From Isurus oxyrinchus (taxonomy: Eukaryota), in the NCBI GenBank assembly GCA_026770705.1, contig JANJGN010000007.1, positions 13,640,001-13,704,000 of the forward strand: a stretch of DNA of 64,000 nt. The letters are read 5' to 3'. Position numbers and translations under genes: made by a program. The notes below the pieces were generated by a model. That model worked only from the letters and a program-made list of their open reading frames with translations. It was not told where the DNA came from and did not search any database. Below are positions 3,130 through 64,000 of the stretch, in pieces. Each line of letters begins with the position of its first letter. The stretch's first letter is position 1.

Positions 3130-3378
3130 ATGTCGCTGCTAATATTCAACATCAGCTACAACACATCCAACATGGCGGCCTCCTTCTTCAGCTTGACACC
3201 CGAAACGGAGCATGACAACGTAACAGACAAGGTGGCTTTTCAGACAGTAACCATGGTGACAAATGGTACCAACACTACTGCCATTCCACCACCTAACATA
3301 GAAACTGGGAGGTCAAGTATGGGGTTGGTGCTCGTACCAGTTGGAATTATCACTATTATAGCGTTAACTGTGGCTATG
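3130..3378 (+). CDS. C3orf18: C3orf18 homologue, coding exon 1 (Thr/Asn-rich luminal N-terminus plus transmembrane helix)
   Basis: ORF MSLLIFN...GLVLVPVGIITIIALTVAM ends at ATG|gtaagt donor (phase 0). Upstream acceptor ctctctctaaccctatgtttcag ends at 3004. GIITII.L.VA matches the C3orf18 TM segment as I recall it. The start may instead be ATG 3172 (aacATGG). Confidence 0.92.
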
Positions 3379-3889
3379 GTAAGTCAGTTAATTTTTCTTG
3401 CCCTATTTCAACCTGGGAAACATGCTTGAAGAGAAAAAAGTTGCAGAACGATGGGGAAAGAGCAGGGAATGCGACTAATTGGGTAGCTCTTTCAAAGGGC
3501 CAGCACAGGAGCAATGGGCTGAATGGTTTCCTTCTGTGCTACCTCATTCTATGTATTCTTGTTTCTTCTTTTATCTTGGGCTCCCCACTCTTGCTTCCCA
3601 CTTCCATTTGCCAAGTGTTACAGCCCAGTTGAGTCCCTCTGTTGATGTTTCTCATGAGTAAGTCAAAGGCAAGCAGGTAAAACCATGTCCTTTCCATGGA
3701 GCTCGTTCCCCTTTCCAGCCAGGAGGTGTACAGCTTGTTCATGATTGCCCCCAGAGTTCCGCCTAATGTTTGTATCTCACTGTGCGAGCTCAAATCTTAC
3801 CAAGCCATTCCAAGACATATGGCACACTGTATCCAGAGTTACCACAACTGGCCATTCTTAAAAATAATTCCTGAAGCCGTGGGCACCTC

Positions 3890-4785
3890 AAGTAATGATA
3901 TTGGAATACAGAGTAACATTTCAAAATTTGGTGATGATACCAAACTTGGAGATGTGGCAAACAGTGAGGATGCTACTGATTGACTGCAACATGGCAAAGG
4001 TAGGCTAGAAGAATTGACAGATAAGTGGCAGATGGAATTTAATACTGAGAAGTGTGAGGTAATGTATTTTCTCAAAAGCAATAGTAAGAGGCAATATAGA
4101 GTTAAAGGCACTGTTCTAAAGTGTAGGCATTGACAGAGGGACCAGGGGGTTCATGTGCACCGATCTTTGAAGGTGGCAGGGCATAGTGAGAGAATAGTTA
4201 GCAAAACATATGGGATATTGGGATTCATAAGTGCAGGTCTTGAGTACAAAAGCAGGGAAGTTTTGCTGAGCTTTTATAAAGCTCTGGTTAGGTCAGAACT
4301 AGTGTATTGCATCCAGTTCTGATCACTATGTTTTAGGAAGGATTTGAGGATCCTTGAGAGGGTGCAGAGGAGATTTACCAGAATGGTTCCAGGGAGGAGT
4401 TGATTTTAATGATATGGTCAGACTGGAGAAGATGGGGTTGTTCTCCTTGGAGCAAAGGAGATTGAGGGGTGATTTGATAGAGGTGTACAAGATTATGACG
4501 TGTTTAGATAAGATAGGCAAAGAAAAGCTGTTCCCATTAGCTGATGGTACAAGAACTGGGGGACACAGATTTAAGGTTTTGGGCAGGAGATGTAGAGGGG
4601 ATGTGAGGAAGAGCTTTTTTACACAGTGAGTGGTAATCCAGGGGTGGTGATGATGAATGATTTCAAAAGGAAATTGGATGGATACTTGAGAGAAATACAT
4701 TTTCAGGGCAACAGGGATAGAGTGGGGAGTGGGACCGATTAGATTGGTCCAAAAGCGTCTACCTCTGTGCCGTAATGACTCTAAC
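3890..4785 (+). mobile_element. CR1 LINE 3' portion (degenerate reverse transcriptase C-terminus)
   Basis: SKFGDDTKLG (FADD box), WQMEFNTEKC, LGLFSLEQRRLRGDLIEVYKIM; contains stops and frameshifts. Confidence 0.92.
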
Positions 4786-5082
4786 TTAGCTGGTCATTGC
4801 TATGCCTGTTTTATGCCCATAAATTTGACACACAATGTTTAATTGAGAGAGATTAATGGCAGCTCCCCACCAGAACCACGAGCCTGTCAATCTATCTTTA
4901 TAGACAGTAACATACCTGGCGAATTTTCCCGCCATTTTCTGCTCTTATTTCAGATTTCCACTGTTTAGCTCTGGCTTCCGGTACACTCTCTGTTTCTGCA
5001 GTCACTCTTCAGTGTTGAATTTTTTGCCCTTCTTTTGCCGTTGCTATATTGACACTAATGAGTAATCTTTCCTTGGATTCAG

Positions 5083-5108
5083 GTTCTGTACATCAGGAAA
5101 AGGAAAAG
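5083..5108 (+). CDS. C3orf18: C3orf18 homologue, coding exon 2 (26-nt microexon, VLYIRKRK-R)
   Basis: ttcag|GTTCTGTACATCAGGAAAAGGAAAAG|gtgagt. Encodes the end of the TM helix and the basic stop-transfer motif; phases fit both neighbouring exons. Confidence 0.93.
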
Positions 5109-5589
5109 GTGAGTGTGTTTGCTCTTTTTTTTAAAGTTTGGCAAAATCCTCCTGAATATTGTTCCTTTTTTTGTGCAGTGAGCAGTTTTAGAGAGGGGGG
5201 TGGGAGTTTAAGTTCCACAGCTGACCAACAGTCTCAACTCTGCTCATTATCAACTTGGAAGAGAGTAGCATGACGTTAACCCATGGACTGCTGACTGGTC
5301 CAATGAAATTACTTTGGGAGAAATTTTAACTCTCCAGGATGTGTTGAGTGGAGTTTAAAGATGAGAAAAAAATGGAAAAGTCATCCCAGCCCACCCCATT
5401 TCCGATTGGGTGGGTCGTAGGGTGGACTCTCTCAGGTGGCAAGTCAGTCCTCCAAGTATTTCAAGGAGGCTGTATGCCTTCGTTTTAACATCAATTTTAT
5501 TTTTGACACCTGCAGACTGGGTTTCCTGGGCCTTAGGAGACTCTAGCAACTGGAGGGAGGTGTGCAGGGTCGGATCCATCGGTTAGTAT

Positions 5590-5800
5590 TGGGAATTCTC
5601 TACCCCAGGCAGCAGGGGAGGCTGGATCATTGAATGTATTCAAGGCAGAGTTAGACAGATTTTTGATCCACAAGGGAGTCCAAGGTTATGGAGGGCAGGT
5701 AGGAAAGTGGAGTTAAGGCCACAATCAGACCAGCGATGATCTTATTGAATGGTGGAGCAGGCTGATTGGGCCAAATGGGCCTATTTCTTATGTTCTTATT
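5590..5800 (+). mobile_element. CR1 LINE 3' end
   Basis: ggaattctctacccc...gatcttattgaatggtggagcaggc...ttcttatgttctta, shared with other CR1 tails in the window. Confidence 0.8.
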
Positions 5801-5848
5801 TTCCTCCACTCCACTGACATTGGATTAGCCCTCATTTCTCACTCCGTC

Positions 5849-6100
5849 TGTTGTAATATGCCTTTAAGGGTTTGTAGCATGACATCACTAGAAAGGAAGT
5901 GTGTCATGCGATCCAGGTTTAGCTTCACTTTTGCTTTTCAACAAAGCACAGATACACAGCTCTGCAGCACTGAGGTCTTCAGGTTTTATATATCTTTATA
6001 AATTTTCCCATGTGCCTAGCCTTAATAAATAAACCGACAATGTGTTTATCCAATCTCTTATGTGAGATTGGTGCCTTTATATCATTATAAAAACACAACA
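5849..6100 (+). mobile_element. Short solo LTR candidate
   Basis: Termini TGTTGT...ACAACA, internal TATA-like run and AATAAA about 75 nt before the end. No clean target-site duplication. Confidence 0.5.
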
Positions 6101-7282
6101 CTCTCCACTGACGCAAGATCACTTCTCAATCCCCACTCCCTCTGTTCCATTGGTGGCTATTTTCTTTCGGCCAGAAAAGTACCAGTTTGACTGTGGGAGG
6201 GTCGCAGGGATGAAAGATGGAGGAATATCAAGATCAGCCAATCCTGTCTTCAACCAATGCCAGTCCACATCCATTAAACAGCAAGGTTTACCAATAATAA
6301 TCAAGAGCAGGAACCATGGCTTTTGCTTTCTCTGATTCCGCGATGCTGATTCCAGGTGGACTGAGATCCTAGACCTCAACACAAACCAATGCCTACCTTG
6401 CGCACTTGCAATGCTTCAGGAGAGCACAGCAATGGTTTCTAATTTATTTCCTCATTGTGTAGCATTACAGATCTACTGGATTTCTCTCAAACTGTGAACC
6501 ATTGATGTAGTAGTGTGATTTTGGGCGTAAATTAATCCTTAAACTTCATTCCTGATCTTTAAGATATCAGTAAGATTAATGAAGCTTAGAAAACTCGGAT
6601 AAGGTACATATGATAATATGGAACATTCAAGATTCTATGGCCCAATATCAATCATGTTGCATCAAATAGGCTGTTCTGTACCAAGGACCTGCCTCCAGGG
6701 TTCTTGCCATCTAATTGCAGATGGACTGCTGGAGAATTGTAATGTCCCCTGACAACTTTGGTCTTCTTCCTCCAACGTTAACTCAATTGCTCCCTAATGC
6801 CCAAAATTTAGTGAGGCAGAGAGAGCTTTGTTACCCATCCCCAATTGCCCTTGAAACAAGTGGCTTGGTAGCCCATTTCAGAGTCAACCACACTGCTGTG
6901 GATAGACCAGATGAGATATGGATGGCAGGGTTCCTTCCCTAAAAGGGATTAGTAAACCAGATGGGTTTTTATGACAACTGATGGTAGTTGTTGTGGTCAT
7001 CATTACCAAGACTAGCTTTATATTCCAGGTTTATTAATTGAATTTAAATTCTACTAGCTACTGTGGTGGGATTTGAACCCATGTTGCCAGAGCTTTAGCC
7101 TGGGTCTCTAGATTGCTGATTGATGGTGACATTACTACAATGCCATCATCTCCCCATTATAGACATTCTGCTTGATTTATTTCAAAGCCAAGGCATTTGA
7201 AAATGGTCCCACTCGCCCATCACTTGGACCCACTCTGACCTACTTTGGCTCCTCCAATATCTTAAATTTAAAATCCCAATTC

Positions 7283-7790
7283 TGGGCACTGCACTTTGGG
7301 AAGCACGTCCAGGCTTTGAAGAGGGTGTAGAGGAGATTTACTGGAATGGTACCAGAAATGAGAGACTTCAGGTACATGGAGAAACTGGTGAAGATGATTT
7401 GTTATCCTTAGAGTAGAAAGGGCTAAGAGTGGATTTGACAGAGGTGTTCAATATCATGAAGGGTTTTGACAGAGCAGTAAAGGAGAAGCTGTTTCCACTG
7501 GCAGAAAGGTCAGTGATCAGGAGGCACAGATTTAAGCTAATTGACAGAGAGGGGAGATAAGGAGAATTTTTTTTCGGCTGCGAGTTGGTGTGATCTGCAA
7601 TGCGCTGCCTGAAAGGGCAGTGGAAGCAAATTCAGTGGTAACTTTCAAAAGGGATTTGGATAAATACTTGAAAGGAAGAAAATTACTGGGGAAAGTGCAG
7701 GGGAATGGTTGCTTGGGAATGGGAATTTGTCAGCTCTTTGAATAAAGAGCCAGTACATACCTCTTTCTGTGCTGGAAGATTCTATGATTC
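7283..7790 (+). mobile_element. CR1 LINE 3' fragment
   Basis: WA..FGK.V.ALKRV.RRFTGMVP motif and a typical CR1 3' end. Confidence 0.85.
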
Positions 7791-8012
7791 TTCTGTCTTT
7801 AAATCTCTCCATGGCCTCACCCCTCCCTATCTCATTAACTATTTTCAGTGCTGCAACCTTGACCAGCTACCACCCCCAGCCAAACTCTTTGTTCCTCTTC
7901 CTCTGCCCTCTCATGCATCCACCCTCGCTTTTATATACAAATCTTAAGGGACTGGACAGAGTAGATGCTGAGAAAATACTTCCCCGGCTGAAATCTCAAA
8001 TATGGAGTCCTC

Positions 8013-9379
8013 GGCCTGGATTTTCATCCTCGAAGCGGGTAGCGGGTAGTGGGAGTTGGGAAATTTCCTGGCTCAGCGTGCCCCCCCACTCACCCGGCAC
8101 CCACCCCCCCCACCCCAGCCAGGAAAAAAGTGCCCTCACAGGCATGATTTTCATTCTAGGGGGTGGGGTTGGTGGGTGTGGGGGGATTGAGGGGTGATGG
8201 GGAATGTGATGGCTGGTGGTGGTGGGTAATGTCAGGAGTCGGGCCTGTAACTCCTGGAAAGAATTCGGAAGCAGCCACAGGGGCAGCCAGGTACGGAGGA
8301 GGACTGTTTTAAAAGGCCCATCTCGGTGCTGTGGGACTTTGTCCCAGTTAAAATAAAAAGAGGAAGGCCCTCTAACCCTTACCCCTCACACCTCCTGATC
8401 CCCATACACTCTCCATTCCCCATCCATACCCTCCACCCACCCTCTCATACCTTCCGTGCCAAGCTATGCCCCTCCACCCACCCCCACATGGCCCGTTATA
8501 CCCTCCATGCTAAGATGTTACACTTCCATGCCCTTTAACTCAAAATACACTCTGTGTAGAGACAGTTAACCCTATAGTGGCAATAAATGTCTCTAAAAAA
8601 GCTTTAAAAAAACAGCCAGGCATTCATAAAAATTGCTTTCACTACACCCCAATAAAAGCGTCAATCATCCTGAATCTTTAAAGTATCAGTAGCAGAAATT
8701 GCAAGCACTTGAAACCTCTTTATCTTGTGTGAATAAGCATTATGAAATTGACAGAAGAGATCAGAGACCCAGAGCTGTCAATCAAGCAATGTTTTCCCTG
8801 TAACCCAGTTGTTTCAGATTCTAACGGATTTCTGGGCTCTCAGGCAAGCCTCATTATACGTTTTTAAAAGCTTTTTTAACACATCCTATTGTCACTCGAG
8901 GGGTCATTGGTTCAATATGGAATGTATAGTGGGTGAATGGGCATTGACGTGCCAGAGCTCGGCATGGAAAGTATGGGGACCCTGGGTAGTGGGTAGAGGG
9001 GCATAGCTTGGCATAGAGGATATTAAGGTCTAAGGTGGGTGGGTGGGGGGCATAGCTTGGCATGGGTAAGATCTTTTCAACTTACCTTTCAAAAGGTTCC
9101 CTCATCCAGACTATGGTTCACAGCACCTCTGACTTTTTGAAAACTGGGCCCAACTCCATGAAAATTGTGGAGAACTAGGACATGTCTAACCCCACCAATG
9201 GATTCGGCCAGGTTGGGAGTGCAGGGTGCGGGCTTGTGACCTGACCCAGTCTGCACCCTCAAACAGCAATGCTGTAAATCAGAAAGCCCGGGAATGGGGG
9301 TCAAGGATCTCGGAATTGGGTCCCGGCCGTCATTTTCACCCCTCCACAAAACCTCCCTGACTCCATAAAAATCCAGCCC
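8013..9379. mobile_element. Non-autonomous PIF/Harbinger-like element inserted in a CR1 fragment
   Basis: Terminal inverted repeats GGCCTGGATTTT / AAAATCCAGCCC; internal inverted C-rich and G-rich arms. Flanks 7930-8010 and 9380-9660 rejoin as one CR1 3' end. Confidence 0.7.
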
Positions 9380-9945
9380 CGATTCTCAGAGTAAGGGGTC
9401 GGCCATTTTGGACCGAGGTGAACGACTTCTTCAGACATAGGGGTTGTGAACCTTTGGAATTCTCTAAGTCAGAGAGCTGTGGATGCTCAGTCATGGAGGG
9501 AGGTCAATAGATTTTTCTGAGCTAACAAAATAAAGGAATATGGGATAATGCAGGAAGGCAGAGCTGAGGTGGAAGATCAGCCATAGTCTTGTTGAATGGT
9601 GCAACCAGCTCAAAGGTCTGAAATCCAGCTTTGTTTTCCTGAGCTTTTATGTTCTTAAGTCTACCGTAGGCAGTCACTTCTGTCCCACACTCCGAAAATC
9701 CTCCCTAAACACCTGCATCTCTCTATCTCCTTCTCCTCTTTTAAGACCCTTCTTGTAACCTCACTTGTTTGTCCAAACATTTAGTCACCTCTCCTGACAT
9801 CTCCTCCTGCGCATCAGCATCCATATTTTCCCCTCAAGCCTCTGTGAAGCGGGGTGGGGGTGGGAGCTTTCCCTGGGGTGGTGGGGTGGGAAGGATCATG
9901 GATTAACACATAAACTTACAGGGTGCAAATGCCCAGCCAAATATG

Positions 9946-10007
9946 CCACCCCCCCTCACCACCCCCACCCCCCCCCCCCCCCCCCCCCCCCCGCCCCCCC
10001 CCCCCAC
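9946..10007 (+). repeat. Poly-C low-complexity tract
   Basis: Near-homopolymeric C run. Confidence 0.95.
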
Positions 10008-10424
10008 CTCGAGTAAGATGTGGAAAAGCTGCACGTAACCCTGAATCCAGTTCTGACTCTTTTTTTGAGCTGGCACGAATGCAAGTTGTTCTAGCTTTTG
10101 TTCTTGTCTTTGCCACTGTCACCACATGGAAACCTTCTAGATTAGATAAGGTTGATCCGGGAGAATACTTTCAGTGAGGCTTCAAACACCAGGTAGCACA
10201 AACTGAAACCAAAGAGGTTTGCAGTGAGGAAGGAAACAAAGGTGAAACTTTCCTCATCCAGAATATAACGGAGCTTCAGGATTGCCAGGAACACGGCAGG
10301 CATGGGTTCAAGGGACAATTTTTCAGACGAGGAATGGAGATCATGGTGAAAGAATGGGGAGGCTGGTCAATGGAAAGGCAATAAGATTGTTGGGCTGAAT
10401 GCTTGTTTTTCCATTCCTAAAATG

Positions 10425-11330
10425 TATCAGCTGTGGCACACTGGGTAACACTCTTGCCTCCGAGTCAGAAGGGTGTGGGTTTAAACTCTACTCCGGAGGC
10501 TCGAGCGCACACTCCAGGTTGATGCTTCCAGTATATCGGGAGATGCCGCCTTTTGCGTGAGATGTTGAACCAAGGCTCCACCTTCTCAGTGGGTGGAAAA
10601 GATCCCAAGGCTTTATTTCCATAGAACCATGGAACCATAGAAAAGTTACAGCGCAGAAAGAGGCCATTCAGCCTGTCATGTCTGCGCCGGCCAGAAAAAG
10701 ACACTCGCCGCTCATTTTAATCCCACTTGCCAGCACCTGGTCTGTAGCCTAGCAGGTTACAGCGCTTCCGATGCAGATCCAAGTACCTTTTTAATGAGTT
10801 GAGCATTTCAGCCTCAACCACTGATTTAGACAGTGAATTCCAGACGTCCACCACCCTCTGCATGAAAAGGTTTTTCCGCATGTCCCTGCTAATCCTTCTA
10901 CCACTCACCTTAAATCTATGTCCCCTTGTAAGTGACCCCTCAGCTAGGGGGGAAACAGGTTTTTACTGTCTACCCTATCCAGGCCCCTTATAATTTTGTA
11001 CACCTCAATTAGGTCAACCCTCAGCACCCTCTGTTCTAAGGAAAACAACCCTAGCCTATCCAATCTTTCCTCATAGCTGCAATTTTCAAGCCCTGGCAGC
11101 ATTTCAAAGGAGAGCAGGGTAATTCTCCTGATGTCCTGGGCCAATATTTACCTGTCAAACAACACCACTGAAAGCAGGTTATCTGGTCAAGTATTACATT
11201 GCTGTTTGTGGGAGCTTGCTGTGCATAAATTGACTGTCGCGCTTCCTACAGCGGAACAGTGACCACACTTCAAAAGCACTTTGATTGGCTGTCAATCACT
11301 TTGGTATGTCGTTGAGGTGCTATATAACTG
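10425..11330 (+). mobile_element. tRNA-derived SINE with L2-like tail, split by a CR1 insertion
   Basis: Head with B-box-like gggtttaaactc at 10425-10619. Tail gctgtttgtgggagcttgctgtgc...gctatata at 11101-11330. Confidence 0.8.
10620..11100 (-). mobile_element. CR1 LINE 3' end
   Basis: SYEERLDRLGLFSLEQR.LR.DLIEVYKII; terminal 8-mer repeat (ccatagaa)n. Confidence 0.9.
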
Positions 11331-11614
11331 AACAGTATGCTGTTCTTGTTCAGGCCCAAGAAGCAACAGTATTTCCTGTCCAAGACCATCCCCTGGTAGC
11401 CAGGGGAGGGAATATATGAATGGCTGCAGGTTTAACTACAGGGCCTCTGAGGTCAGGTCCCTCTGACTGTTGAAGGAGTTCAGTCACTTGAAGACCTTAA
11501 TTGCTAAGCAAGAATCCTGCAGGGTGAGGTAGAATAGGGCTTACCTTCCCTTCTCCAGCAAGGACACAGGCCAAACTCCATCTTCCCTATGGAAAGCCCA
11601 GGAGAATGAACAGT

Positions 11615-11840
11615 AGGGTTGCCAACCCTCCATGATTGAATATGGGAAAAATCTGTTTGACTGACAGTCAAGAATCGTCCAATCAGGTAAGGAGGAGTCT
11701 GTTCGCTTTCCAATTGGCTATGGGAGGCCGGGGCCTGTAGGATGGACATGTCAGGTGACCACTGGCAGAAGAATGTGGGGGTGGAGCACTGGGAGGCAGG
11801 AGGACATGTGATGGAACCTCCAAGCACAGTTGGCAACTCT
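11615..11840. mobile_element. MITE with AGGGTTGCCAAC termini
   Basis: agggttgccaac...gttggcaactct. Related copies at 27143-27526, 41026-41296 and near 62236. Confidence 0.7.
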
Positions 11841-11864
11841 AATCTACAATGGATGGGGATTTTT

Positions 11865-12630
11865 TAAAAATTCATTCATGGGATGTGAACACTGCTGGCA
11901 AGGCCAGAATTTATTGCCCATCCCTAACTGCCCTTGAGAAGGTGGTGGTAAGCTGCCTTCTTGAACCGCTGCAGTCCATGTGCTGCAGGCACACCCACAA
12001 TGCCATGAGTGAGGGAGTTCCAGGATTTTGACCCAGCGACAGTGAAGGAACGGCGATATAGCTCCAAGTCAGGATGGTGTGTGGCTTGGAGGGGAGCTTG
12101 CAGATGGTCGAGTTCAAATACATCTGCTGCCCCTTGACCTTCTAGGTGAAGAGACAACTGTGGGTTTGGTAGGTGTTGTCAAAGGATCTTTGGCAAGTTG
12201 TTGCAGTTCATCTTGTAGCTGGTACACACTGATGCCACTTTGCTTTGTGAGGGAGTGAATTTTTAAGGTGGTGGATGGGATGCCAATCAAGTGGGCTGCC
12301 GTGTCCTGGATGTGTTAAACGTCTTGAGTGTTGTTGGAGCTGCGCTCATCCAGACCATTAGAAAATATTCCATCCCACTCCTGACTTGTGCCTTGTAGCT
12401 GGTGGACAGGTTTTGGGGAGGCAGGGCCTTGTTGCAGCCTCTGACCAATTGTAACCACAGTATGGGGGGGGGGGTGGAATTCAGCGATGGTAGTGCGGTT
12501 GAACATCAAGAAGAGGTGGTCAGATTCTCTCGCCTTGGAGATGGTCATTGCTTGGCACTTGTGTGGCACAAATGTTGCTTGCCGCTTGTCAGCTTAAGCC
12601 TGGATATTGTCCAGATCTTGTTGCACATTG
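11865..12630 (-). mobile_element. CR1-group LINE 3' fragment (second family)
   Basis: RSFTVAGSKSWNSL..GIVGVP..HGLQRFKKAA.HHLLKG and F.PHKCQAMTIS motifs; other copies at 17350, 35720 and 60935. Confidence 0.85.
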
Positions 12631-13819
12631 GCATGGAAATTGAGAAAAGAAATCTGCACCTCTTTCCCCTGGCACGTTGTGCCCAGGGAATTGGGTAAAC
12701 GACTCTGGAATAACAAAGGAAAATCAACTTCCTCATAACCAAGCAGAGAAGTGAGCCCAACATGGCCAGCTGAGTTCATCTGGCAGCTGAAGCTGGGATT
12801 AAAACTCCAGCCTTTTGATTAGGTTGTCCCAAGGATCTAAAAGTAAAGCTCATACTCTCATCAGTATTGCATTTCCACCCACTATTCTCTCCATCTGTTG
12901 CTGCACAAAATAAATGTCTTTTGTAAGGTAGTTTGATATGAATGGTGGGCCTTTATTAAAACCAGATCTCTTTCTGAGATATTTATTTCCCTTATGCTGT
13001 GGTTAAAGATGGATTTAGCATTGGCCAGGCTCTGGTTTTTAACGTCTCATTCACAAACGGTACTGGCAGGATATCCTAAGGGTCTCGAGGCCGGCTCACC
13101 TCCAACTGAAATAGTGCAGCTGGCTCTTGGTTTCTCTGCGACCCGTGACAAGCAGAGGCTTCAGTGAATGACACATCCTCGTCCCTGGTGTCCTGTGGTT
13201 TGCAGAGTTTGCTTTGCCGAGGTGACATTTGCTTCCACAGGACCATCAACCGCAGAAACCACCGTGACTTGTGGCTGGCCCCCGGTTTCTTCTCCCCTTC
13301 CTCCCTGTGAATCCATTCATTAAACTGCGGACAAGTGCTGGCCAAGATAAGAGAGGGAGAGGGCGTGGCCACCTACACTTCCTCGGGCTGGAGCCTAGTG
13401 CCACCCCCCACTCCCCTCCTCACCCCCCCTCCCCCCCCATCCCACCGCCCACTCCGTCCCCCTCCATTCATGAACATACATCATTCTAGATGAAAGGAGA
13501 AGCTTTAAACCTTTCCGCTGCTAAAATTAGGGCTGGAAGTCAAGACTTCAAAAACAGCAAATGTGGGACCGTTCAAAGATCATTCTCATTTCTTAACACT
13601 TTAAATCCCGATTCTAACTGCTGGCGAGAGTCGTGTGGCTGATGGAGCTGGGGATTGTGGTCGTGGGGGGCGGTGGGTGGGGGGGGGGCGGGCGTGCAAC
13701 AGGAAGGTGGAGATCCAACTGAGTGGTCCTTTACCCAGGCTCCTACTCATGATGCTGAAGAGCCACAGTGAGCCATCGCCGGTCGGCGCCTAGCTAGACC
13801 CGGGGTCTATAGGCAGCGC

Positions 13820-14128
13820 TTGTCATTCCTGCAGATGGCCAAGAACCAGTGTTGGCAAAGGCTGCGCATGAACAGGGAACTTGTCGGTCACATCTGTCAC
13901 TTGCCGCAGGATTTGGCGCCACGAGGACATGGAGGGCATCCACTGCCAGTGGCCATGAAAGTGACCGTGGCGCTCAATTTCCATGCCAGTGGCTCCTTTC
14001 AGGGCTCCACGGGTGACCTCTGTAGGAACTCACAAGCCTCCATCCACAAATGCAACCAGGAGGTCATGGATGCCATCTTCGTGAACTTTGTGCATTTTGC
14101 CCGGGATCAGCTCACATACCCTCCGTGA
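13820..14128 (+). pseudogene. Harbinger transposase N-terminal (HTH) fragment; DDE core not seen
   Basis: RLRMNRELVGHICHL...LPVAMKVTVALNFHASGSFQGSTGDLC.NSQASIHKC..EV.DAI, typical of HARBI1-like proteins. Confidence 0.85.
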
Positions 14129-14759
14129 TAAGGCTCCTGTCATGGACAAGCAGCGATGCCCATAGTCCCTACATTCCAGGAGGATGATGACAACATGCAG
14201 AGGGGACTCTCTATAGACCGTCACATAGTTTATGTGAATGTCTGACTCTGTCTGGCTGGCTGGTACCTTGCTTGCTCTCTGTGAACAGGGTCATATCGTG
14301 GAGATGCAGCGGGGAAACTTTAACTTCTCCTGATCCTATGGCATCCTGCGTGAGCTGAACCCTTCAGGATCACACTGTCACCGGACACAGATGCTGATGA
14401 GATGTGGGCCAGCTGAGAGCGCACAGAGAGAAAGATGGAACTCTGTGCCGCCGGCCCAGGACATTCTGGCAGCAATGATAAGCCCCATCGAGGTACAGGC
14501 ATGACTGATGTGACCAGTGACTGTGAAGGCGCAGCATCAGTGTGCTGGGAAGTTTGTACAAAATGCAGGGAAGAGGCATTGGACTGAGACACCTGCCTTT
14601 ATCTTGTGCAGGGTCCAAGATTTCACATCTGACTGACACGAACCCTGCTCATCTGAACAGGAGCCATAGGCAGGGAGACATTCTTGCGAGTTTATTTATA
14701 ATAGTGAACATTATATACAAGTGATTAACACCCGTGTCCAGGCTGTGCAGCTACATCTT

Positions 14760-16435
14760 CTTAACCTTCCTAACCCTGCCACTACAGCTTGGTGCTCCCC
14801 CAACATCCACAGTGGAGGTGGAGGCTGCCTGCTGACTGCTATCCCCTGTCTGTGATGACCTTGACGGGTGTCTTCTAGATGCCTGAGAGCTGGAGGGCCT
14901 CAGCCTGTTTTCAGGGCCCTGCTGTGTGGCAGTAGTACCTCCTTGGCCTGTAGAGCTGGAGCTGCTGGGGTCAGAGGAAGAGGGGATTTGGATGGGCTGG
15001 ACACTCCCGGAGTCACCTGGGCAGATGGCCCCGGGGTGTGCACATGTTTATCCTCCTCCCTATGGGTAGCTGAGGGGCCCTGGCTCACTTCTTGAAGGGA
15101 AGAGGAAGCTGGAGTGAGATCGAGCTGCCCCGGTCCCCTCTCTTGTTGACAGTGTTGGAGGCCAACAATGGCATAAGTGATGGAGTTCAGCCTGCACAGA
15201 AGTGCAGGACCAAGGTCTCCATGATGGCTACCATCCTGCTAATGTTGACCTTTGTGTGTGGGCATGACAACACTGTCACCTCAGACTGAAGGCGGATGGA
15301 CACCTCCACCATGCCTTGCAATCTGAAGAGTGCAGCTGCCACCCCTTCCTGCTGTTCCCGTTATTGTTGCTGAGGCTCCAACAACTGAGTGAGGACTTAC
15401 TCAGCAGATTCCTTGCCTCCAGTGGTCCTCTGAATGCTGACAACCTCGGGTGTCCCTGCCTCCGCCTGCTGTGGAACAGGTTGTGTGCTGTGCTCACTAG
15501 ACAGTGAACCTGAGCCTGCTGTATATGTAGGTCCCATCGAGGTGTGTAACGCTGTGTTAGTGGAGGGCGTGGGTGAGCACTGTGACAGGTCTTCCAGGGT
15601 GCTCTCTCAGTGTCCTCATCCGAGCAGCTGTCGTCACTCGAGTCGGGGCCAAGGTTGCCTGAGGGCGACTTGGCAGATGCGCCTATGAGAGAAAGCAGAG
15701 ATTATAGTGCATGGCCGCTGCGGTACACAGAACAGTGGACTCACAGTTGAATTGCCAGAGGGATGATCTGGTGCATGATCCTCACTTGGATGCCTGGCGC
15801 CCACCTCACCTTCGCTGCAGGAATGGTCCACTTCGCCTCCGGCCAGCTCTAATACGTGATCTTCGAAGGGAGTTGAGGACCTTTTTGTTCGGCACTCCAC
15901 CCCTGCACTGGGTCCTCCCCCTTTTATTGTGCGCAACCTTGTCCTGCACAAAGATTGATGGAGTGAGTGTGAGTAAGGCGCATTTCCAGCCATATGAGCA
16001 GGTTGCCAGGCGTGCGTGTGTGCTGAGTTGGAGCCATGGGCGGGTTGAGGGGGTGATTCCCAGAGGAGATGAGGCCAGATGGAGATGTGAGGGTGTGTGT
16101 GAGAGAGTGAGTGATGATGCCACTTGAGCTGGCAGTGAGTGATGTGTGATGGGCATGTGAGTTTAGAATGATGAGATGGTTGACTCACCCTGGTGGCACG
16201 GGTGAGATCGTTCATCCTCTTTCTGCACTAGGTGGCCAACTTCTTGTGGGCAGTGTTGGCACTGACCACCGCTGCCACCGCCTCTCAAGCCGGATTGGTG
16301 ATGTTGCTGTCCCTGCTGCAGCCAGAGTGGGGGTAGAAGACATTATGGAGGGCCTCCGTGGCATCCAAATGACCTTCCAGGATGTGTTACTGAATCGGAA
16401 GGCTGCAGCCTTCTTGCCTTTCTGGGCCCATCTTC
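14760..16435 (-). pseudogene. Harbinger Myb/SANT-like accessory gene remnant with introns
   Basis: EAVAAVVSA......A..CRKRMNDLTRATR, then gtgagt donor near 16188, acceptor ctttgtgcag, then DKVAHNKRGRTQCRGGVP; frameshifted. Confidence 0.7.
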
Positions 16436-17349
16436 TGTGCAGCAGTCCAGGGCTGGAAGCACTGAGAGGTGTGCACGCGGCTGCACTTTAAATATGACAC
16501 CCGGCCTGAGGAAGTGGCGAGGTGATGTCGTGGCAGGCAAATCGGAAATGGCGTGCTTCCTGGGAATGCATGAATAATGAGGCGGGATTGGGATGATACG
16601 GCCTGAAAAGCCGCCATTGCAGCCAGCAGGTAGAAAGTCCTTTCTCCCTCCTGCTACTGCACTTAGAGCAAACCTGGGACGAATCCACCCTATCTGTCTT
16701 GCCCACTCTCACACCCACTCCTGCCAGGATTGAATGTTCCGCATGTTAACTCGTTTTCAATAAAAGCCCGATTGGATAGAAGAATAAAAGAGGGAGAAGA
16801 GCAGAAGAGAAGGGAGAGGGAGAAAGAGAAGCAGATGAGGAAGGAAACAGAGAGAGAAGTAGCAGTATGAAAATGACAAGGCAGGTAAGGGAGAGTGCCT
16901 GACCTCTACCATGTGAGATACCACATTATATAGCCATACATTCAGGCTATCAACTATTCCACTCAAGCATTGCAACACCATGAACAACATCATGGGAGAA
17001 TCAACACAGACCAGGGATTGGCCCTGGGACTTTCCTATAATGTATAGTATCAATTGACACTGATTTTGAAGGTTGCAGGTTCAAACCCAAACCCAACACT
17101 CAAGCACAAAATCAAGGGCAACTTGTGCTTAAACAGCTTAGCACTTTTATTAAAATGGCAAACAGAGGGGATTTTGTGATCAACACGTGACTTTTAGTAC
17201 TAAAATTGCCTAAATAGCTCTTTGTTACATTATCCGTTTGTCACCCATTGACAAAGAGGGGTGGGCGATACACGAAATGTAGAGTTGATCTTATTGAATA
17301 TTGGGTCAGTAGGAAGTGCTGGCCATAAGTGAGATTGATATTTCTCTTT

Positions 17350-17670
17350 TTTTTTATTCATTCACGGGATGTGGGCTTTGCATTTATTGTCCATCCCTAG
17401 TTGCCCTTGAGAGGGTGGTGACGAGCGGCCTTCTTGAACGCTGCAGTCCATGTGGTGTAGATACACCCATAGTGCTGTTAGGAAGGGAGTTCCGGGATTT
17501 TGACCCAGCAACAGCGAAGGAATGTTGATATATGAGTGGCTTGGAGGGGAACTTCCAGGTGATGGTGTTCTCATGTGTATGCTGCCCTTGTCCTTCTAGA
17601 TGGTAGTGGTCGTGGGTTTGGAAGGCGCTGTCGAAGGAGTCTTGGTGTATTCCTGCAGCGCATGCTGGAA
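17350..17670 (-). mobile_element. CR1-group LINE 3' end
   Basis: Same family as 11865-12630. Confidence 0.8.
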
Positions 17671-18004
17671 CGTGCTGATGGGATTTATAAAGGTTAGAAG
17701 GTCAGCAGCAGGAAGGGCTCGCTGTTCAGTGCAAAATTCCATTACTCTCATTTTAAAGATGCTTTGGACCAGCTTCAAGAGCTCTAGTTATTTCTGTGGC
17801 TACCTCTCTGACCTAGATCCCTGCCAAAGTCAAGGGTTTAGTCTCAGAGCTTCCTATGAATGCTGTCTGCCAGCACAAAGTTCAGCTCGAACAGTACTTA
17901 ATCAGACCACTGGATGGAGTACTACACAGATGGAAAGAAAGATCTTGCATTTATCTAGCGCCTTGTTAGGTCTATGCAATGTCACTGAGTGCTTCAAGTC
18001 CAAT

Positions 18005-18450
18005 GAAAGAAAAAAGAAAGAATCGCTTTTATATAGCACTTTTCACGATCACCAGATATCTCGAAGCGCTTTATCGCTAATGAAGTACTTTTTAAAGTGT
18101 AGTCAGACTTATGATGTAGGAAACGCAGCAGCCAATTTGCACACAGCAAGCTCCCACAAACAGCAGAGTGATATTGACCAGTTAATCTGTTGTGATGTTG
18201 ATTGAGGGATAAATATTGTCTCGGACACCAGGGAGAAGTCCCCTGCTCTTCTTCAAAATAGTGCCATGGGATCTTTTATATCCAACCAAGCAGGCAAACA
18301 GGGTTTGGGTTTAATGTCTTGTAGCACCACCTACAGTGCAGCACTCCCTCAGTGCAGCACTGATTTTTGCACTCAAGTCCTGGAGTGGGACTTGAACCCA
18401 GGAAACTGGAGACACAAAGGCAAGAGTGTTAGCCATCAAGCCATGCCTGA
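18005..18450 (-). mobile_element. tRNA-derived SINE with L2-like tail
   Basis: ggagtgggacttgaaccc head (reverse complement) and gcacacagcaagctcccacaaacagc core. Confidence 0.85.
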
Positions 18451-19351
18451 CAATGCATGACCATTGGGGCCCTGTTATGTAGGCAAATATACAGGTTAAA
18501 CTGAAAGGGAATGATTGATAAAGAAAAGGAAAGAAAGAAAGGAAACTGAAAAAGAAATATGGAAGAAAAGAGGAAAAAAACCCAAAACCTGCACTGAGTA
18601 AAGTGTCTATAAATGTCCCAAAGTGTCTTATAGCCTATGATGTACTTCTTAAGTGCAGGTAATTCCTAAATGTAGTGATGTCTCCATTTTGAGAGCTGCT
18701 TTCCTCATGGGTCAGCGTGACTAAGCAAGTACAGTAGCTAATGGGGTCTGGACCATCCTAATATCGCAGGGATGTATCTGATGGTTAAACAACTTGCAAA
18801 AAGAAAGCATGAAACGTAGAAGTTAAAAGGTCAGTATTATTCTCCTCCCACTTTCTCTCCCCATAGCGTGTGGGCCCTGCAGTCAGCCTGATTGCACGGC
18901 TGCTAGCTGTCCCCCAGCACCTCGCCTTTATGGACACTCTTCATCTGTAAGCCTAAACAGGGAGTGTCAGTAGGCTGGTCAACACTGAAGGGTATCCTAA
19001 CTGCCCGACTCTGTCTTCACCCCAGGTAAGTATGTGACAGAGGCCTTTAGACAATGGGCAAGAGCTGGAATAGTGCCCGGTTTCCTCTCACCTTCGACTG
19101 GGAGATTGATGCCAATTGTAGTGCCTTTGTGATTTAGTGGTTCGATTGGATAATAGAGCGTAAATCAGCAAACAAACTGGACTGTAGAGTTCACCTCCAG
19201 AGTCTTATGCTAATTAACTAATGAAGGGCCTGAGGTTGACACTTGACACAAAAATCCAAGTACCTTTTGAAAGGGTGACCATTAAAATGCTAGTATGTGC
19301 ATGTGATTCTTCAGATTTCTTTGTGGCACTGGAGGGACTGTCAGCTTTTGA

Positions 19352-19591
<240 letters not shown>

Positions 19592-19714
19592 TGAGGGTAT
19601 CTACTCTTTATTTTCATCATATTACTTCTTCTGAAGGTACCCCTGGCTGTTAGGGCATGATCAGTGGCTGCAGCCTGGCACCATCTCAGTGGTCATTCCC
19701 CATGTGTGTGAGGC

Positions 19715-20030
19715 TTAGCAGGGAGGGTTGTCAATGAGGGTTGTCAGTGAGGATTGGCGTGTGGGTTGGCAGTGAGCATCAGCAGTGAGGATTGGCAGCA
19801 TGGTTTAGCAGCATAGGTTGATATTGAGGGTGGGCAGTGTGGGTTAACATTGAAGGTTGGCAGTGAGGGTTAACAGTGAGGGTTGGCAGTGAGGGTTGGC
19901 AATGAGGGTTAATGGTGAGTGTGACAGTGATGATTGACAATGAGGATTGACAGTGAGGATTAACAGTGAGGGTTAACAGTGAGATTTAATGGTGAAGGTG
20001 ACAGTGAGGGTTAACAGTGAGGGTTAACAG
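19715..20030 (+). repeat. 13-bp minisatellite (CAGTGAGGGTTGG / CAGTGAGGGTTAA)
   Basis: More than 20 degenerate tandem units in the last coding intron of C3orf18. Confidence 0.92.
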
Positions 20031-20799
20031 TCTATTCAGTTAGTGAGATGTGCCATAGTCAACCCCATAATCAGACTAGCTGAAATGCCCATTTTTGATA
20101 AAGCCACAATGCCTTTGCTTGATAGGGTGAAGTGAGTGTTAGAGAATTGGCCACCATTTTAATCCCTCCTGATATTGAGTGAAGTCATTGGAGATAAAAA
20201 TCGAGATGGATGTAAAGTGGGTAGGGCCCATTCACAATCACCCGATTGGGACTATCATCCATGGGAAAGGTGAGGTCATTCATTTGGGACATATATAGAA
20301 CCTAATATCCAAGGAACTAGGAACAGTGCCGGAGCAGTGACATTTAGAGGTTGAAGCACAGGAATGGTTGAGACATGAGGGGCTGAATAACATGCTACTG
20401 TTCCTGCATTCCTAAAGTTAAAATCTACCCCAATGAGTATATATTGCAGGGGTAATTAAGGTCCCATCTCTACATAATGGCTGGCCGTGGAACATTGAAC
20501 ATTCCAGTTGTCAGCTTGCTGAGGTGGGCACTTCACGGTTGGATTTTGTTGTGAATTTGCAGGTAAAAGCTTGAAATGCAAATGCAACAAATAACATTTA
20601 AAATGGCCACTTCACTGCTTCCTCAATATTGGAAATGGTTGAACATGAGGAGGGTGAAACTTCCCATACATTTTAAGAGTTAACAAAAAATGTATGGAGT
20701 CTGCCAGAGTGACTATCAATCAGAAAATCCAGTGGAGGCAGTGGAGGGGCGAATTTGACTCGTTGCTAAGTGACTCATTTCCATGTTCCATTCTCCTAG

Positions 20800-20880
20800 A
20801 TTCTGATGCCAAGTCAAGGATCCTTGCAGAGGCCCAGCAGACTTGTGTTCACTGATGTGGCCAATGCCATTCATGCCTGA
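20800..20880 (+). CDS. C3orf18: C3orf18 homologue, last coding exon
   Basis: ttctcctag|ATT CTG... translates ILMPSQGSLQRPSRLVFTDVANAIHA*. The C-terminus RPSRLVFTDVANAIHA is characteristic of C3orf18 rather than SMIM29. Confidence 0.95.
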   Translation: MLMPSQGSLQRPSRLVFTDVANAIHA

Positions 20881-34339: not shown

Positions 34340-34471
34340 GGCCGGGATTTTCCAGCCCGGCTGTGGTGGGGGATCCACCGCAGGAAATCCGACGGCCCAG
34401 CCAGAAGTCCATTGACTTGCGGCGAGAACCGAACGATCCTGGGCGGCGGGCGGGGCTGGAAAATCCCTCCC
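34340..34471. mobile_element. Short CpG-rich Harbinger-type MITE
   Basis: GGCCGGGATTTTCCAGCCC...GGGCTGGAAAATCCCTCCC termini. Confidence 0.8.
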
Positions 34472-35315: not shown

Positions 35316-35428
35316 GGCCGGGCTTTTCCGGCCCTGGTCCCGCGGGGGCCCAGCCAAAAGCCCAATGACCTTCGGCAGGACTGGACAATCCTGGCGGCCG
35401 TCGGGGCCGGGACCGGAAAATCCCGCCC
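35316..35428. mobile_element. Short CpG-rich Harbinger-type MITE
   Basis: GGCCGGGCTTTTCCGG...CCGGAAAATCCCGCCC, flanked by 3-bp AGT on both sides; related to the 34340 copy. Confidence 0.8.
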
Positions 35429-35719
35429 AGTGTAGTGCCACAAAATACACTTCGTCTGTGAAAGAAATGAGGAAAGGGTTGGCTAGTGGGGGGTCTTGGG
35501 GAGCTGGTGGGGCTGATTGGATAGCTCTTTCAAAGAGGTAGCACAAGCGTGACAGGCCAAATGGTCTCTTTACGCGTTGCGTGATTCTGTGACAAACTCT
35601 ATGATGAGGCGTGGCTGCCCTTTGTGGAGATTCATCAGGGCGTTTGATGGATTACTGATGGGAGGGTTCTGTTATACGTAAAAAAGATAGAGATTGCCTG
35701 GGTGGTTACCCTGATGCAC

Positions 35720-47835: not shown

Positions 47836-48054
47836 GTTGCTGAAAAGAGAGGCACATTACCGAAGCTTTTGTTTTGCATTCATCAGGACAAATACAAGAA
47901 TGCCAAATTTCAAATGCTCTCAACAATTTATGCTACAAGAGAAAAGGGTGCTGATTGGTTGGCAAGTCGACTCTGATTGGCTGAGGCGTTGCCATGGAGA
48001 AAGGGTTAAAAAAAGGCACAAGGCTTGAACGTATTCATCTGTTTTCAGAAAATG

Positions 48055-48091
<37 letters not shown>

Positions 48092-48204
48092 ACTTCTAGC
48101 AAGTGTAAATGGGCTATGTGATCATTTGAAATATGGCATTCTTGCGTTTGCCCAGATGAGTGGAAGATGAAGAGCTTCAGCAGCATGTCTCCTTTTTCAG
48201 CAAC
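47836..48204. mobile_element. Penelope-like remnant with inverted arms and an internal (GT)n
   Basis: Arms 47836-47916 and 48123-48204 are inverted copies. Interior translates IAHLHLLEVT...FL...EYVQAL.LF on the minus strand, like the C-terminus of the GIY-YIG fragment at 51525-51832. Confidence 0.8.
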
Positions 48205-48623
48205 ATAACTAGAATTCTTGTTAAGGCACACTAATCCCAAAAACCAACAAAAACACAAACATCCCAATGACACCTGTCAACACAGCTAACTAAGATTGTA
48301 CAGTAACCATTTTAAATATATATTTTCTTAAAGGAAAAGTAAACCCAGTGCCCACATTACAGAAGATGTAAACTGATGCGAATTGATTTTCTTAAGTATA
48401 TGAAACCCACTTAGTTCCTTTTCCACAGTGCCCATGTTGACACTTGGTAAAGGCTTTACGCTGGCTTTTGAGGTTGCTGTCCAACATGGCAGTGGCACAG
48501 TTGTGGCAGAAGGAAATTTATAATTAAAAAAAAATAAAAAATAAAAACAAAAAAAATTAAAAAAAAACATTTTTTTTGTTGTTGCAATCTTCATGGCTTG
48601 CTAGACAGCGGCTGCCCAGCCAA

Positions 48624-48631
48624 TGAGGTAG
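48624..48631 (-). promoter_or_regulatory. let-7 8mer target site (CTACCTCA)
   Basis: Plus strand TGAGGTAG, 18 nt downstream of the putative stop codon. Confidence 0.6.
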
Positions 48632-48649
48632 AATTTTACTGTGAGGTGC

Positions 48650-48703
48650 TCAGTTGCCTCCTGAAGTCGATGGCCCCTCTTGTCCTTCCGCAGTCCCCTC
48701 CTG
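48650..48703 (-). CDS. Putative terminal coding exon of a minus-strand gene, (Q)EGTAEGQEGPSTSGGN*, possibly HMGA family
   Basis: On the minus strand: polypyrimidine tract tgtttctttttgtttctctaac, tandem CAGCAG acceptor, phase-0 frame ending TGA at 48652-48650, then a let-7 8mer and U-rich UTR-like sequence. Upstream exons not found, so the frame is assumed. Confidence 0.55.
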   Translation of the reverse strand, partial: QEGTAEGQEGPSTSGGN

Positions 48704-48719
48704 CTGGTTAGAGAAACAA

Positions 48720-49310
48720 AAAGAAACAGGTTACCATCACCCAACCTCAGCTGATCTGCTGCTGAAACCCTCACCCTTGCCTACGTCACCTCTAGGGATG
48801 ACTATTCCAATGGTCTCCTAGCCAGCCTCCCATTTTGTACCTTCTGTAAACGTGAGGCATTCAAAACTCTGCCACCTGTAGCCTTGCTCGCACTAAATCC
48901 CGTTCATCCAACACCCCTGTGCTCGCTGACCTATATTGCCTCCCAGTTCAGCAATTATAAAATTCTCATCCGGGTGTTCAAATTCCTTCACTGCCTTACC
49001 CCTCCCTATCTGTAACCTCCTCCACAACCTCAGAAACTTCTGTGCTCCTCTAATTCTGGCCTCTTGAACAGCTCCGATTTTCATTGCTCCACGATTGGTG
49101 GCATTGTCTCCAGCTGCATGGGCCCTAAGTTCCAGAACTGCCTCCTTAAGCCTCTTCTCCTCTCTCTCTTTCGCTCCTTAACCTCTTTGAACAAGCTTCC
49201 TGCCCAAAGCCACTCCATGTTGGCTTGGTCACAAATTTTGTCTGAGTACACTCCTGTGGAGTGCTTTAGGCCATTTTGCTACGCTAAGAAGGTGCTACAT
49301 AAACGCAAGA
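48720..49310 (+). mobile_element. L2-like LINE 3' portion
   Basis: AAETL..A.VTSR.DYSNGLLA, TPVLADL..LP and IGG...SCMGPK motifs. Confidence 0.85.
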
Positions 49311-51524: not shown

Positions 51525-51832
51525 ACATGTTCTTTTTGTTTGCAAAGGACAAGGCCCTGGGTGTGAATACATGTAACTTCTAGCATGTGTAAACGAGCTA
51601 CACTGCGAGGCCGACTGATGATCTTAAAGTAGCTGTTAGTGCAATTCTTAGCACAATCAGGATTGTTTAGCAAGTGTTGTCCAATTGTGGAATCACATCT
51701 AAGGTTGGGCACTATGTTTTGAGTTCTGCAAACAGGGACTGGTTGGGTATGGTCAGTACTTTGCCTGCTGTGAACAGCCAAGGGGATGTGCCGTTTGGTA
51801 CGATCCACCAGTTGTTGGGGCATATGGACTAC
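51525..51832 (-). mobile_element. Penelope-like element GIY-YIG endonuclease fragment
   Basis: QQL.DR.KRHIP...CDS.IGQHLLNNPDCAKN....FKIISR.RS...LHMLE...I......LCKQKE. Confidence 0.85.
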
Positions 51833-63990: not shown

Positions 63991-64000
63991 GGGGGAGGGG

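What the first reader, a model, noticed from the sequence alone, without database searches (positions are those of the whole stretch)
48600..48730. Last exon of a possible HMGA-family paralogue convergent with C3orf18
Seen: a minus-strand acceptor, a 16-17 aa acidic/Gly C-terminus (QEGTAEGQEGPSTSGGN*) in phase 0, and CTACCTCA 18 nt after the stop. Known (from memory): HMGA1 and HMGA2 end in a short phase-0 acidic exon; HMGA2 has a let-7 8mer about 20 nt after its stop and more sites further down; human HMGA1 lies tail-to-tail with SMIM29, the paralogue of C3orf18; human C3orf18 has no HMGA neighbour. Inference: this may be an additional HMGA ohnologue from vertebrate genome duplication, retained here and lost in mammals. 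No AT-hook exon was found in 48.7-64 kb, so a large intron must be assumed.
Basis: partly seen in the sequence, partly recalled or inferred. Interest (0 to 1): 0.82.

Follow-up and report, generated by a model that had tools for sequence, protein, structure and literature searches.

The report
Possible HMGA-like tail exon in shark
A short, weakly transcribed stretch next to the shark C3orf18 gene looks like the last exon of a gene with a polar, mildly acidic tail and a let-7 microRNA site; it may be an extra HMGA-type chromatin gene, but its DNA-binding exons were not found.

Summary
On the minus strand a strong tandem (CAGCAG) acceptor opens at 48703/48700. Then come 17 codons (QEGTAEGQEGPSTSGGN), TGA at 48652-48650, and CTACCTCA at 48631-48624, 18 nt after the stop.

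It is unlikely to be chance. It is the only place in all six frames where 17 residues run without a hydrophobic or basic residue and with at least 3 acidic ones. The acceptor is one of 75 strict acceptor-like sites.

Two RNA-like runs of one sample hold error-free contigs over 48462-48693 and 48479-48671, while about 4 kb of unique flank had depth 0. No splice junction was seen.

The neighbour is a true C3orf18 orthologue on the + strand, so the two are convergent. C3orf18 and SMIM29 are paralogues. A paper places SMIM29 downstream of human HMGA1.

HMGA identity is not shown. There is no AT-hook on the minus strand at 48.7-64 kb. The tail is only weakly acidic.

Best reading: a real terminal exon, about 0.4 that it is HMGA-type. 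The scan's only related note, s1-897121, is on this same window, not on other DNA.

The parts
48704..48730 (-). 3' splice site: possible branch point near 48733, pyrimidine tract, AG at 48705-48704, and a second AG at 48702-48701 (CAGCAG tandem acceptor)
   Evidence: Sequence. It is one of 75 strict acceptor-like sites in the window. No spliced read was seen.
48653..48703 (-). Putative last coding segment: 17 codons in phase 0 (QEGTAEGQEGPSTSGGN), or 16 if the second AG is used
   Evidence: It is the only 17-residue stretch in six frames with no hydrophobic or basic residue and at least 3 acidic ones. No Pfam match.
48650..48652 (-). Stop codon TGA
48624..48631 (-). let-7 8mer seed match CTACCTCA, 18 nt after the stop
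   Evidence: 7 matches on both strands against 2.25 expected, 4 of them on the minus strand. Context.
48462..48693 (.). Stretch held without any difference in contigs of RNA-like runs X1 (232 nt) and X2 (193 nt, 48479-48671), at depth 2-3. It covers 14 of 17 codons, the stop, the let-7 site and 187 nt of 3'UTR.
   Evidence: table 8 records 6 and 29. Colinearity through the masked T-rich run is inferred from the bin depths 0.77 and 0.71 (table 2). The strand is unknown.
48741..49102 (.). Copy of a highly abundant dispersed repeat just upstream of the acceptor, consistent with intron or intergenic DNA
   Evidence: depths in the hundreds to thousands at 90-95% likeness in all four runs, with many loose ends.
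3130..20880 (+). C3orf18 orthologue. Coding exons lie at about 3130-3381, 5083-5109, 19400-19528 and 20800-20877, with the stop at 20878-20880. It is convergent with the putative exon, 27.8 kb away.
   Evidence: 87% to Scyliorhinus canicula C3orf18; tblastn exon by exon; 93% to whale-shark C3orf18; 37% to whale-shark SMIM29-like.

Best explanation
This is the genuine 3'-terminal exon of a minus-strand gene whose other exons lie beyond base 64000, across an intron of more than 15 kb.

The exon adds a 16-17-residue polar, Gly-rich, mildly acidic (net charge -3) disordered tail. It then runs into a 3'UTR that carries a let-7 8mer 18 nt after the stop. On this reading the mRNA is repressed when let-7 rises during differentiation.

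The gene is most likely an HMGA-type architectural chromatin factor: a third paralogue linked tail-to-tail to C3orf18, just as HMGA1 is linked to the C3orf18 paralogue SMIM29.

Shown here: the sequence features, their rarity, low-level transcription of the exon, the identity and orientation of C3orf18, and the C3orf18/SMIM29 paralogy.

Inferred: use of the splice site, the reading frame, let-7 repression and HMGA identity.
For: - Features and coordinates.
- Rarity: the only non-hydrophobic, non-basic 17-mer with at least 3 acidic residues among 127,894 windows. It abuts one of 75 strict acceptors, and 7% of 419 permuted 8-mers find such a context.
- Transcription: exact contigs in X1 and X2 (one sample) over 48462-48693. 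About 4 kb of unique flank in the same 6-kb stretch had depth 0 in all four runs.
- No competing gene: 0 credible Pfam domains in 123 minus-strand ORFs at 48.7-64 kb, 112 minus-strand ORFs at 20.9-48.7 kb and 126 plus-strand ORFs at 34-64 kb. No Rfam family in the window.
- Synteny: C3orf18 orthologue convergent. SMIM29 is its paralogue and is present in a shark. SMIM29 lies downstream of HMGA1 in human (PMC8009153 passages).
- HMGA2 exon layout and let-7 sites: PMC2702300 passages.
- HMGA relatives without an acidic tail exist: zebrafish Hmga1b (bioRxiv 10.1101/241927 passages) and Xenopus XHMG-AT-hook (PMC3723657 passages).
Against: - No R-G-R-P AT-hook and no basic, non-hydrophobic phase 0-0 mini-exon on the minus strand at 48.7-64 kb.
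- No joint or loose end at 48700/48703. The X1 contig stops at 48693 without running into another exon.
- Contigs carry no strand, and 'RNA' is the tool's guess for these runs.
- Two RNA-like runs of organism B (X10, X11) show nothing exact here.
- The tail has 3 Glu and 5 Gly of 17 and no S/T-x-x-D/E site, unlike the 'constitutively phosphorylated acidic tail' described for HMGA (PMC3723657 passage).
- All three frames are open after the acceptor.
- A 2020 review states that gnathostomes have two Hmga genes (PMC7013770 section 15).
- The peptide could not be compared with any HMGA protein by a tool.
Confidence: 0.4

Rival explanations
1. It is a real terminal exon, but of a gene or long non-coding RNA unrelated to HMGA. 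The polar tail and the let-7 site belong to some other let-7-regulated or unannotated transcript lying between C3orf18 and the next gene.
For: The evidence for a real exon is the same. Nothing HMGA-specific was found: no AT-hook, a weakly acidic tail, and no Pfam or Rfam match. Short polar C-terminal tails are common in nuclear proteins (general knowledge).
Against: The convergent pairing with a SMIM29-family gene mirrors the human HMGA1-SMIM29 neighbourhood. A short phase-0 tail-only exon followed at once by a let-7 8mer fits HMGA2 (layout; site position recalled). No other coding exon was detected in 43 kb.
Confidence: 0.3
2. It is a chance constellation in intergenic DNA. An AG after a T-rich tract, a purine-rich stretch that happens to be open, and one of several CTACCTCA copies coincide, and the two low-depth contigs are transcriptional noise or stray DNA.
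For: CTACCTC is over-represented across the window on both strands (21 against 6.2 expected), partly inside SINE-like repeats. All three frames are open. Contig depth is only 2-3, in one sample, with no strand and no junction. The features were picked after reading the sequence.
Against: The joint rarity stands: a unique composition, one of 75 acceptors and a 7% control rate. The only exact transcribed patch in about 5 kb of unique sequence falls on the predicted exon and ends 10 nt short of the acceptor.
Confidence: 0.2
3. It is a relic. The exon is the decaying tail exon of an HMGA ohnologue that is dying or dead in this lineage. It is still weakly transcribed, and former Glu codons have drifted to Gly (GAR to GGR).
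For: Gly codons GGG, GGA, GGG, GGA and GGC alternate with GAG and GAA. The tail has lost the acidity and the CK2-type sites expected of HMGA. Expression is very low or absent in most runs.
Against: The acceptor, the frame, the stop and the 8mer are all intact. A 17-codon frame says little either way. There is no comparison copy.
Confidence: 0.1

Closest known systems
HMGA2 terminal exon (exon 5) with its let-7-regulated 3'UTR
   Same: A short last exon encodes only the C-terminal tail, and let-7 sites lie in the 3'UTR (PMC2702300 passages). The AT-hook exons are separated from the tail exons. That this is by large introns, and that the first site lies about 20 nt after the stop, is recalled.
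   Different: The tail here is Gly-rich and only weakly acidic (3 of 17). The neighbour is C3orf18, which is not the HMGA2 neighbourhood. Only one let-7 site is secure, and the AT-hook exons are unseen.
HMGA1-SMIM29 (C6orf1) gene pair on human 6p21
   Same: A SMIM29-family membrane-protein gene lies next to the 3' end of the candidate. The paralogy of C3orf18 and SMIM29 was shown here, and the human adjacency comes from PMC8009153 passages.
   Different: The partner here is the C3orf18 orthologue, and the stops are 27.8 kb apart. The tail-to-tail orientation in human is recalled only.
Zebrafish Hmga1b and Xenopus XHMG-AT-hook proteins
   Same: These are HMGA-related proteins that lack the acidic tail (bioRxiv 10.1101/241927 passages; PMC3723657 passages). 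A non-acidic tail therefore does not exclude HMGA descent.
   Different: hmga1b sits beside nudt3b/pacsin1b, so it is a teleost duplicate of HMGA1, not a C3orf18-linked gene. The genomic neighbours of the Xenopus gene were not available to me; its Fig. S1 is a supplement and was not seen.

Membership tests
HMGA (high mobility group AT-hook) proteins | Three AT-hook DNA-binding motifs (R-G-R-P core) in the upstream exons | tested here: inconclusive
   No RGRP, GRP[RK] or related basic motif in any minus-strand frame at 48.7-64 kb. No basic phase 0-0 mini-exon there either. The exons could lie beyond the window, which the tools cannot reach.
HMGA (high mobility group AT-hook) proteins | Acidic, constitutively phosphorylated C-terminal tail (PMC3723657 passage) | tested here: inconclusive
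   The tail has no basic or hydrophobic residue and net charge -3, but only 3 Glu against 5 Gly of 17 and no S/T-x-x-D/E site (sequence). Some HMGA relatives lack the tail.
HMGA (high mobility group AT-hook) proteins | Short final exon that encodes only the tail and is entered in phase 0 | tested here: met
   A strict acceptor followed by 17 codons in phase 0. This rests on sequence only, with no spliced read. The HMGA2 layout is; the phases of HMGA introns are recalled.
HMGA (high mobility group AT-hook) proteins | let-7 seed matches in the 3'UTR | tested here: met
   An 8mer lies 18 nt after the stop and inside the transcribed patch. Further minus-strand sites at 46986, 43461 and 40228 lie in DNA not shown to be UTR.
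HMGA (high mobility group AT-hook) proteins | Neighbourhood: 3' end facing a SMIM29-family gene | tested here: met
   The C3orf18 orthologue is convergent. Paralogy with SMIM29 is shown.
HMGA (high mobility group AT-hook) proteins | Sequence or phylogenetic grouping with HMGA1/HMGA2 proteins | not testable with these tools
   The exon ORF is 26 aa, below the 40-aa minimum of the search for homologous proteins and the 30-aa minimum of the other searches.

The most novel reading that the evidence does not exclude
Sharks retain a third HMGA ohnologue from the vertebrate genome duplications. It is linked tail-to-tail to C3orf18 as HMGA1 is to SMIM29, has a de-acidified Gly-rich tail, and keeps a let-7 8mer just after the stop. 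That would mean both the HMGA/SMIM29-family linkage and let-7 control of HMGA predate the duplications, and that this copy was lost in the bony-vertebrate lineages described so far.
Probability: 0.35. Interest if true: 0.7.

Novelty: new member of a known kind. Interest (0 to 1): 0.45.

Why it matters
The one review read here (PMC7013770 section 15) describes jawed vertebrates as having two Hmga genes. My searches found no paper holding HMGA1, HMGA2 and 'ohnolog' together. The top 15 listed of 156 papers with 'hmga' and 'shark' showed nothing relevant in their titles or abstracts.

A C3orf18-linked third copy would add a member to a small family of developmental and oncogenic chromatin factors. 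It would date the let-7/HMGA regulatory link and the HMGA/SMIM29-family gene pair to before the genome duplications. It would also offer a natural variant with a non-acidic tail.

If it is not HMGA, it is still an unannotated let-7-site-bearing transcript in a 43-kb stretch otherwise empty of recognisable genes.

Tried and rejected
- **AT-hook scans** of all frames found only chance matches and nothing on the minus strand upstream. A scan for basic, non-hydrophobic phase 0-0 mini-exons gave 0 candidates.
- **Pfam** on 123 + 112 + 126 stop-to-stop ORFs around the site gave two chance-level hits (E 0.0025 and 0.0052) and otherwise nothing. Pfam on the three reading frames of the exon gave nothing. 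Rfam on the whole window gave nothing, and there are no tRNAs.
- **'CpG islands'** at 34.3 and 35.3 kb are two look-alike CpG-rich stretches that I take for copies of a dispersed repeat, not a promoter. This rests on reading; the repeat finder at its settings paired nothing.
- **The ~19-kb let-7 3'UTR of note s1-897121** has no support. Exact RNA contigs reach only to 48462. Of the downstream CTACCTC sites, 30554 and 30358 lie in what I read as SINE-like sequence. The first canonical minus-strand poly(A) signal is ATTAAA at 47473.
- **Zebrafish hmga1b as the same gene** is rejected, because it lies beside nudt3b/pacsin1b.
- **The local Pfam copy** lacks PF27898.
- **Scan-note word searches** for HMGA, C3orf18, AT-hook and CACNA2D2 returned 'met in no finding'. 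'mobility' and 'ohnologue' returned unrelated notes.
- **Supplements** were closed and never requested. Fig. S1 of PMC3723657 (Xenopus locus) and Table S1 of bioRxiv 10.1101/241927 might bear on the synteny.
- **Spliced models:** the C3orf18 model was compared exon by exon only.

Full report
**What is there.** On the minus strand the sequence reads ...ggtaacctgtttctttttgtttctctaaccag|CAG|GAG GGG ACT GCG GAA GGA CAA GAG GGG CCA TCG ACT TCA GGA GGC AAC TGA. The AG at 48705-48704 follows a long pyrimidine tract. The phase-0 frame gives QEGTAEGQEGPSTSGGN, with the stop at 48652-48650. CTACCTCA lies at 48631-48624, 18 nt after the stop. An in-frame TAA at 48733-48731 closes the frame upstream, so the stop-to-stop ORF is only 26 aa.

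**Is it more than chance?**
- I required at least 80% pyrimidines at positions -22 to -5, C or T at -3, and no AG in -14 to -3. Under that rule the window has 75 acceptor-like sites on both strands, 42 on the minus strand, and this is one of them.
- Of 419 composition-matched permutations of the 8-mer, 7% occur anywhere in the window within 40 nt after the stop of a 10-40-codon frame that follows such an acceptor. The let-7 8mer does so once, here.
- Of 127,894 17-residue windows in six frames, only 4 have no hydrophobic or basic residue and at least 3 acidic ones. All 4 overlap at this locus.
- These tests were framed after the fact, and all three frames are open for 17, 21 and 33 codons. Even so, the coincidence of a unique composition, a rare acceptor and one of four minus-strand 8mers is hard to put down to chance.

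**Transcription.** The look-up of sequencing runs on 47000-50500 listed two small RNA-like runs of one sample (X1, X2; organism A) holding 7% and 5% of the words. DNA-sized runs of organism B held 56-59%.

I laid X1, X2 and two RNA-like runs of organism B (X10, X11) on 45800-51799. One 232-nt contig of X1 matches 48586-48693 with no difference. One 193-nt contig of X2 matches 48586-48671 in the same way. The bin depths of 0.77 and 0.71 for 48400-48599 are exactly what these contigs give if they run on colinearly to 48462 and 48479 through the masked T-rich tract.

Together the contigs cover 14 of the 17 codons, the stop, the 8mer and 187 nt beyond. Everything else that was laid is repeat: depths of hundreds to thousands at 90-95% likeness at 47875-48003, 48741-49102, 50427-50466 and 51634-51731. 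About 4 kb of unique sequence in the same stretch had depth 0 in all four runs, which serves as an internal silent control.

Limits of this evidence:
- Depth is 2-3, from one sample.
- Contigs carry no strand.
- 'RNA' is the tool's guess for these runs.
- The X1 contig simply ends at 48693, 10 nt short of the acceptor, with no joint or loose end there.
- X10 and X11 show nothing exact at the exon.

**Surroundings.**
- The + strand holds a C3orf18 gene. Its first coding exon (3130-~3381) is 87% identical to Scyliorhinus canicula C3orf18.
- Exon 19400-19528 is 93% identical to whale-shark C3orf18 and 37% to whale-shark SMIM29-like. The window gene is therefore the C3orf18 orthologue, and it is convergent with the candidate exon, 27.8 kb away.
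- Between and beyond the two I found no other gene. There were no credible Pfam domains in 123 minus-strand ORFs at 48.7-64 kb, 112 minus-strand ORFs at 20.9-48.7 kb, or 126 plus-strand ORFs at 34-64 kb. There was no Rfam family and no tRNA.
- A LINE reverse-transcriptase fragment (identified by eye), apparent SINE-like copies and two look-alike CpG-rich stretches fill the space.
- Directly upstream of the acceptor lies a copy of a very abundant repeat (48741-49102), as expected for an intron.

**The HMGA reading: what I could check.**
- A phmmer search of shark C3orf18 against 1.84 billion representatives found about 100-aa proteins at 40-48% identity. Their sources name them 'small integral membrane protein 29', and one is from whale shark. 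C3orf18 and SMIM29 are therefore paralogues, and both exist in sharks.
- Passages of PMC8009153 state that SMIM29 (C6orf1) lies downstream of HMGA1 on 6p21. The orientation is not given there.
- Passages of PMC2702300 confirm that HMGA2 AT-hooks are encoded by exons 1-3 and the acidic C-terminus by exons 4-5, and that the 3'UTR holds eight let-7 sites.
- Section 15 of the review PMC7013770 says gnathostomes have Hmga1 and Hmga2.
- Passages of bioRxiv 10.1101/241927 show that zebrafish hmga1a and hmga1b are both flanked by nudt3/pacsin1 copies. They are teleost duplicates of HMGA1, not a C3orf18-linked gene. Hmga1b lacks the acidic tail.
- Xenopus XHMG-AT-hook proteins also lack the acidic tail (PMC3723657 passages).

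**The HMGA reading: what I could not check or what speaks against it.**
- No R-G-R-P motif or relaxed variant in a basic context lies on the minus strand at 48.7-64 kb. No basic, non-hydrophobic phase 0-0 mini-exon was found there.
- The tail has 3 Glu and 5 Gly of 17 and no S/T-x-x-D/E site. That is a poor fit to a 'constitutively phosphorylated acidic tail'.
- The Gly codons are GGR/GGC next to GAR codons, so a formerly Glu-rich tail is conceivable. That is inference only.
- The peptide cannot be searched. It is below the 40-aa minimum of the search for homologous proteins and the 30-aa minima elsewhere, and I did not try to get round that.
- The position of the first let-7 site of HMGA2 and the tail-to-tail orientation of HMGA1 and SMIM29 remain recalled.

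**Mechanism proposed.** A minus-strand pre-mRNA is spliced across an intron of more than 15 kb into 48703/48700. The exon supplies a short disordered tail and the start of a 3'UTR whose first element is a let-7 8mer just outside the ribosome's footprint at the stop. let-7 would repress the message as cells differentiate, as it does for HMGA2 (established for HMGA2; inferred here). The length of the 3'UTR is open. RNA support ends at 48462, and the first canonical poly(A) signal is ATTAAA at 47473. I see no support for the ~19-kb UTR of note s1-897121.

**Verdict.** The HMGA-ohnologue reading is coherent and gains from the verified paralogy and neighbourhood. It lacks its defining evidence, namely AT-hook exons, a splice junction and a phylogeny.

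| Reading | Confidence |
|---|---|
| Functional HMGA-type terminal exon | 0.40 |
| Terminal exon of another gene or lncRNA | 0.30 |
| Chance plus transcriptional noise | 0.20 |
| Relic of a lost HMGA copy | 0.10 |

Novelty if true: a new member of a known kind. Interest: 0.45.

Noticed in passing
window 63531-63980: A minisatellite of about 20 copies of a 23-nt unit (AGGGGCTGATTCTCTAATGTGGG), with a 91-nt higher-order period, at the window's end.
   Followed up: no
window 23584-23850 (+): An open frame that looks like a LINE reverse-transcriptase fragment (…YLDFQKAFKKVPHKRL…) in the space between C3orf18 and the candidate exon. It was identified by eye, not by a family search.
   Followed up: no
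window 34330-34470 and 35310-35430: Two similar CpG-rich stretches that pass simple CpG-island criteria but look like copies of a dispersed repeat, not a promoter. The repeat finder at its settings paired nothing.
   Followed up: partly
window 48058-48090 and 48514-48585: A (TG)16 microsatellite and a long T-rich (A-rich on +) low-complexity run lie inside the putative 3'UTR. The reads tool masks both, which cuts contig alignments there.
   Followed up: partly
window 1-64000: CTACCTC (let-7 7mer-m8) occurs 21 times on both strands against 6.2 expected from shuffles. At least two copies (30554, 30358) lie in what I read as SINE-like repeat sequence, so let-7 seed counts in this genome need repeat masking.
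   Followed up: partly
window 26321-26667: A G-rich/C-rich low-complexity tract that reads as poly-Gly on one strand and poly-Pro on the other.
   Followed up: no
proteins P0012, P0013 (Scyliorhinus canicula): The catshark C3orf18 locus (LOC119973827) is annotated with longer isoforms of 205 and 226 aa besides the 160-aa form. Their extra sequence was not examined.
   Followed up: no
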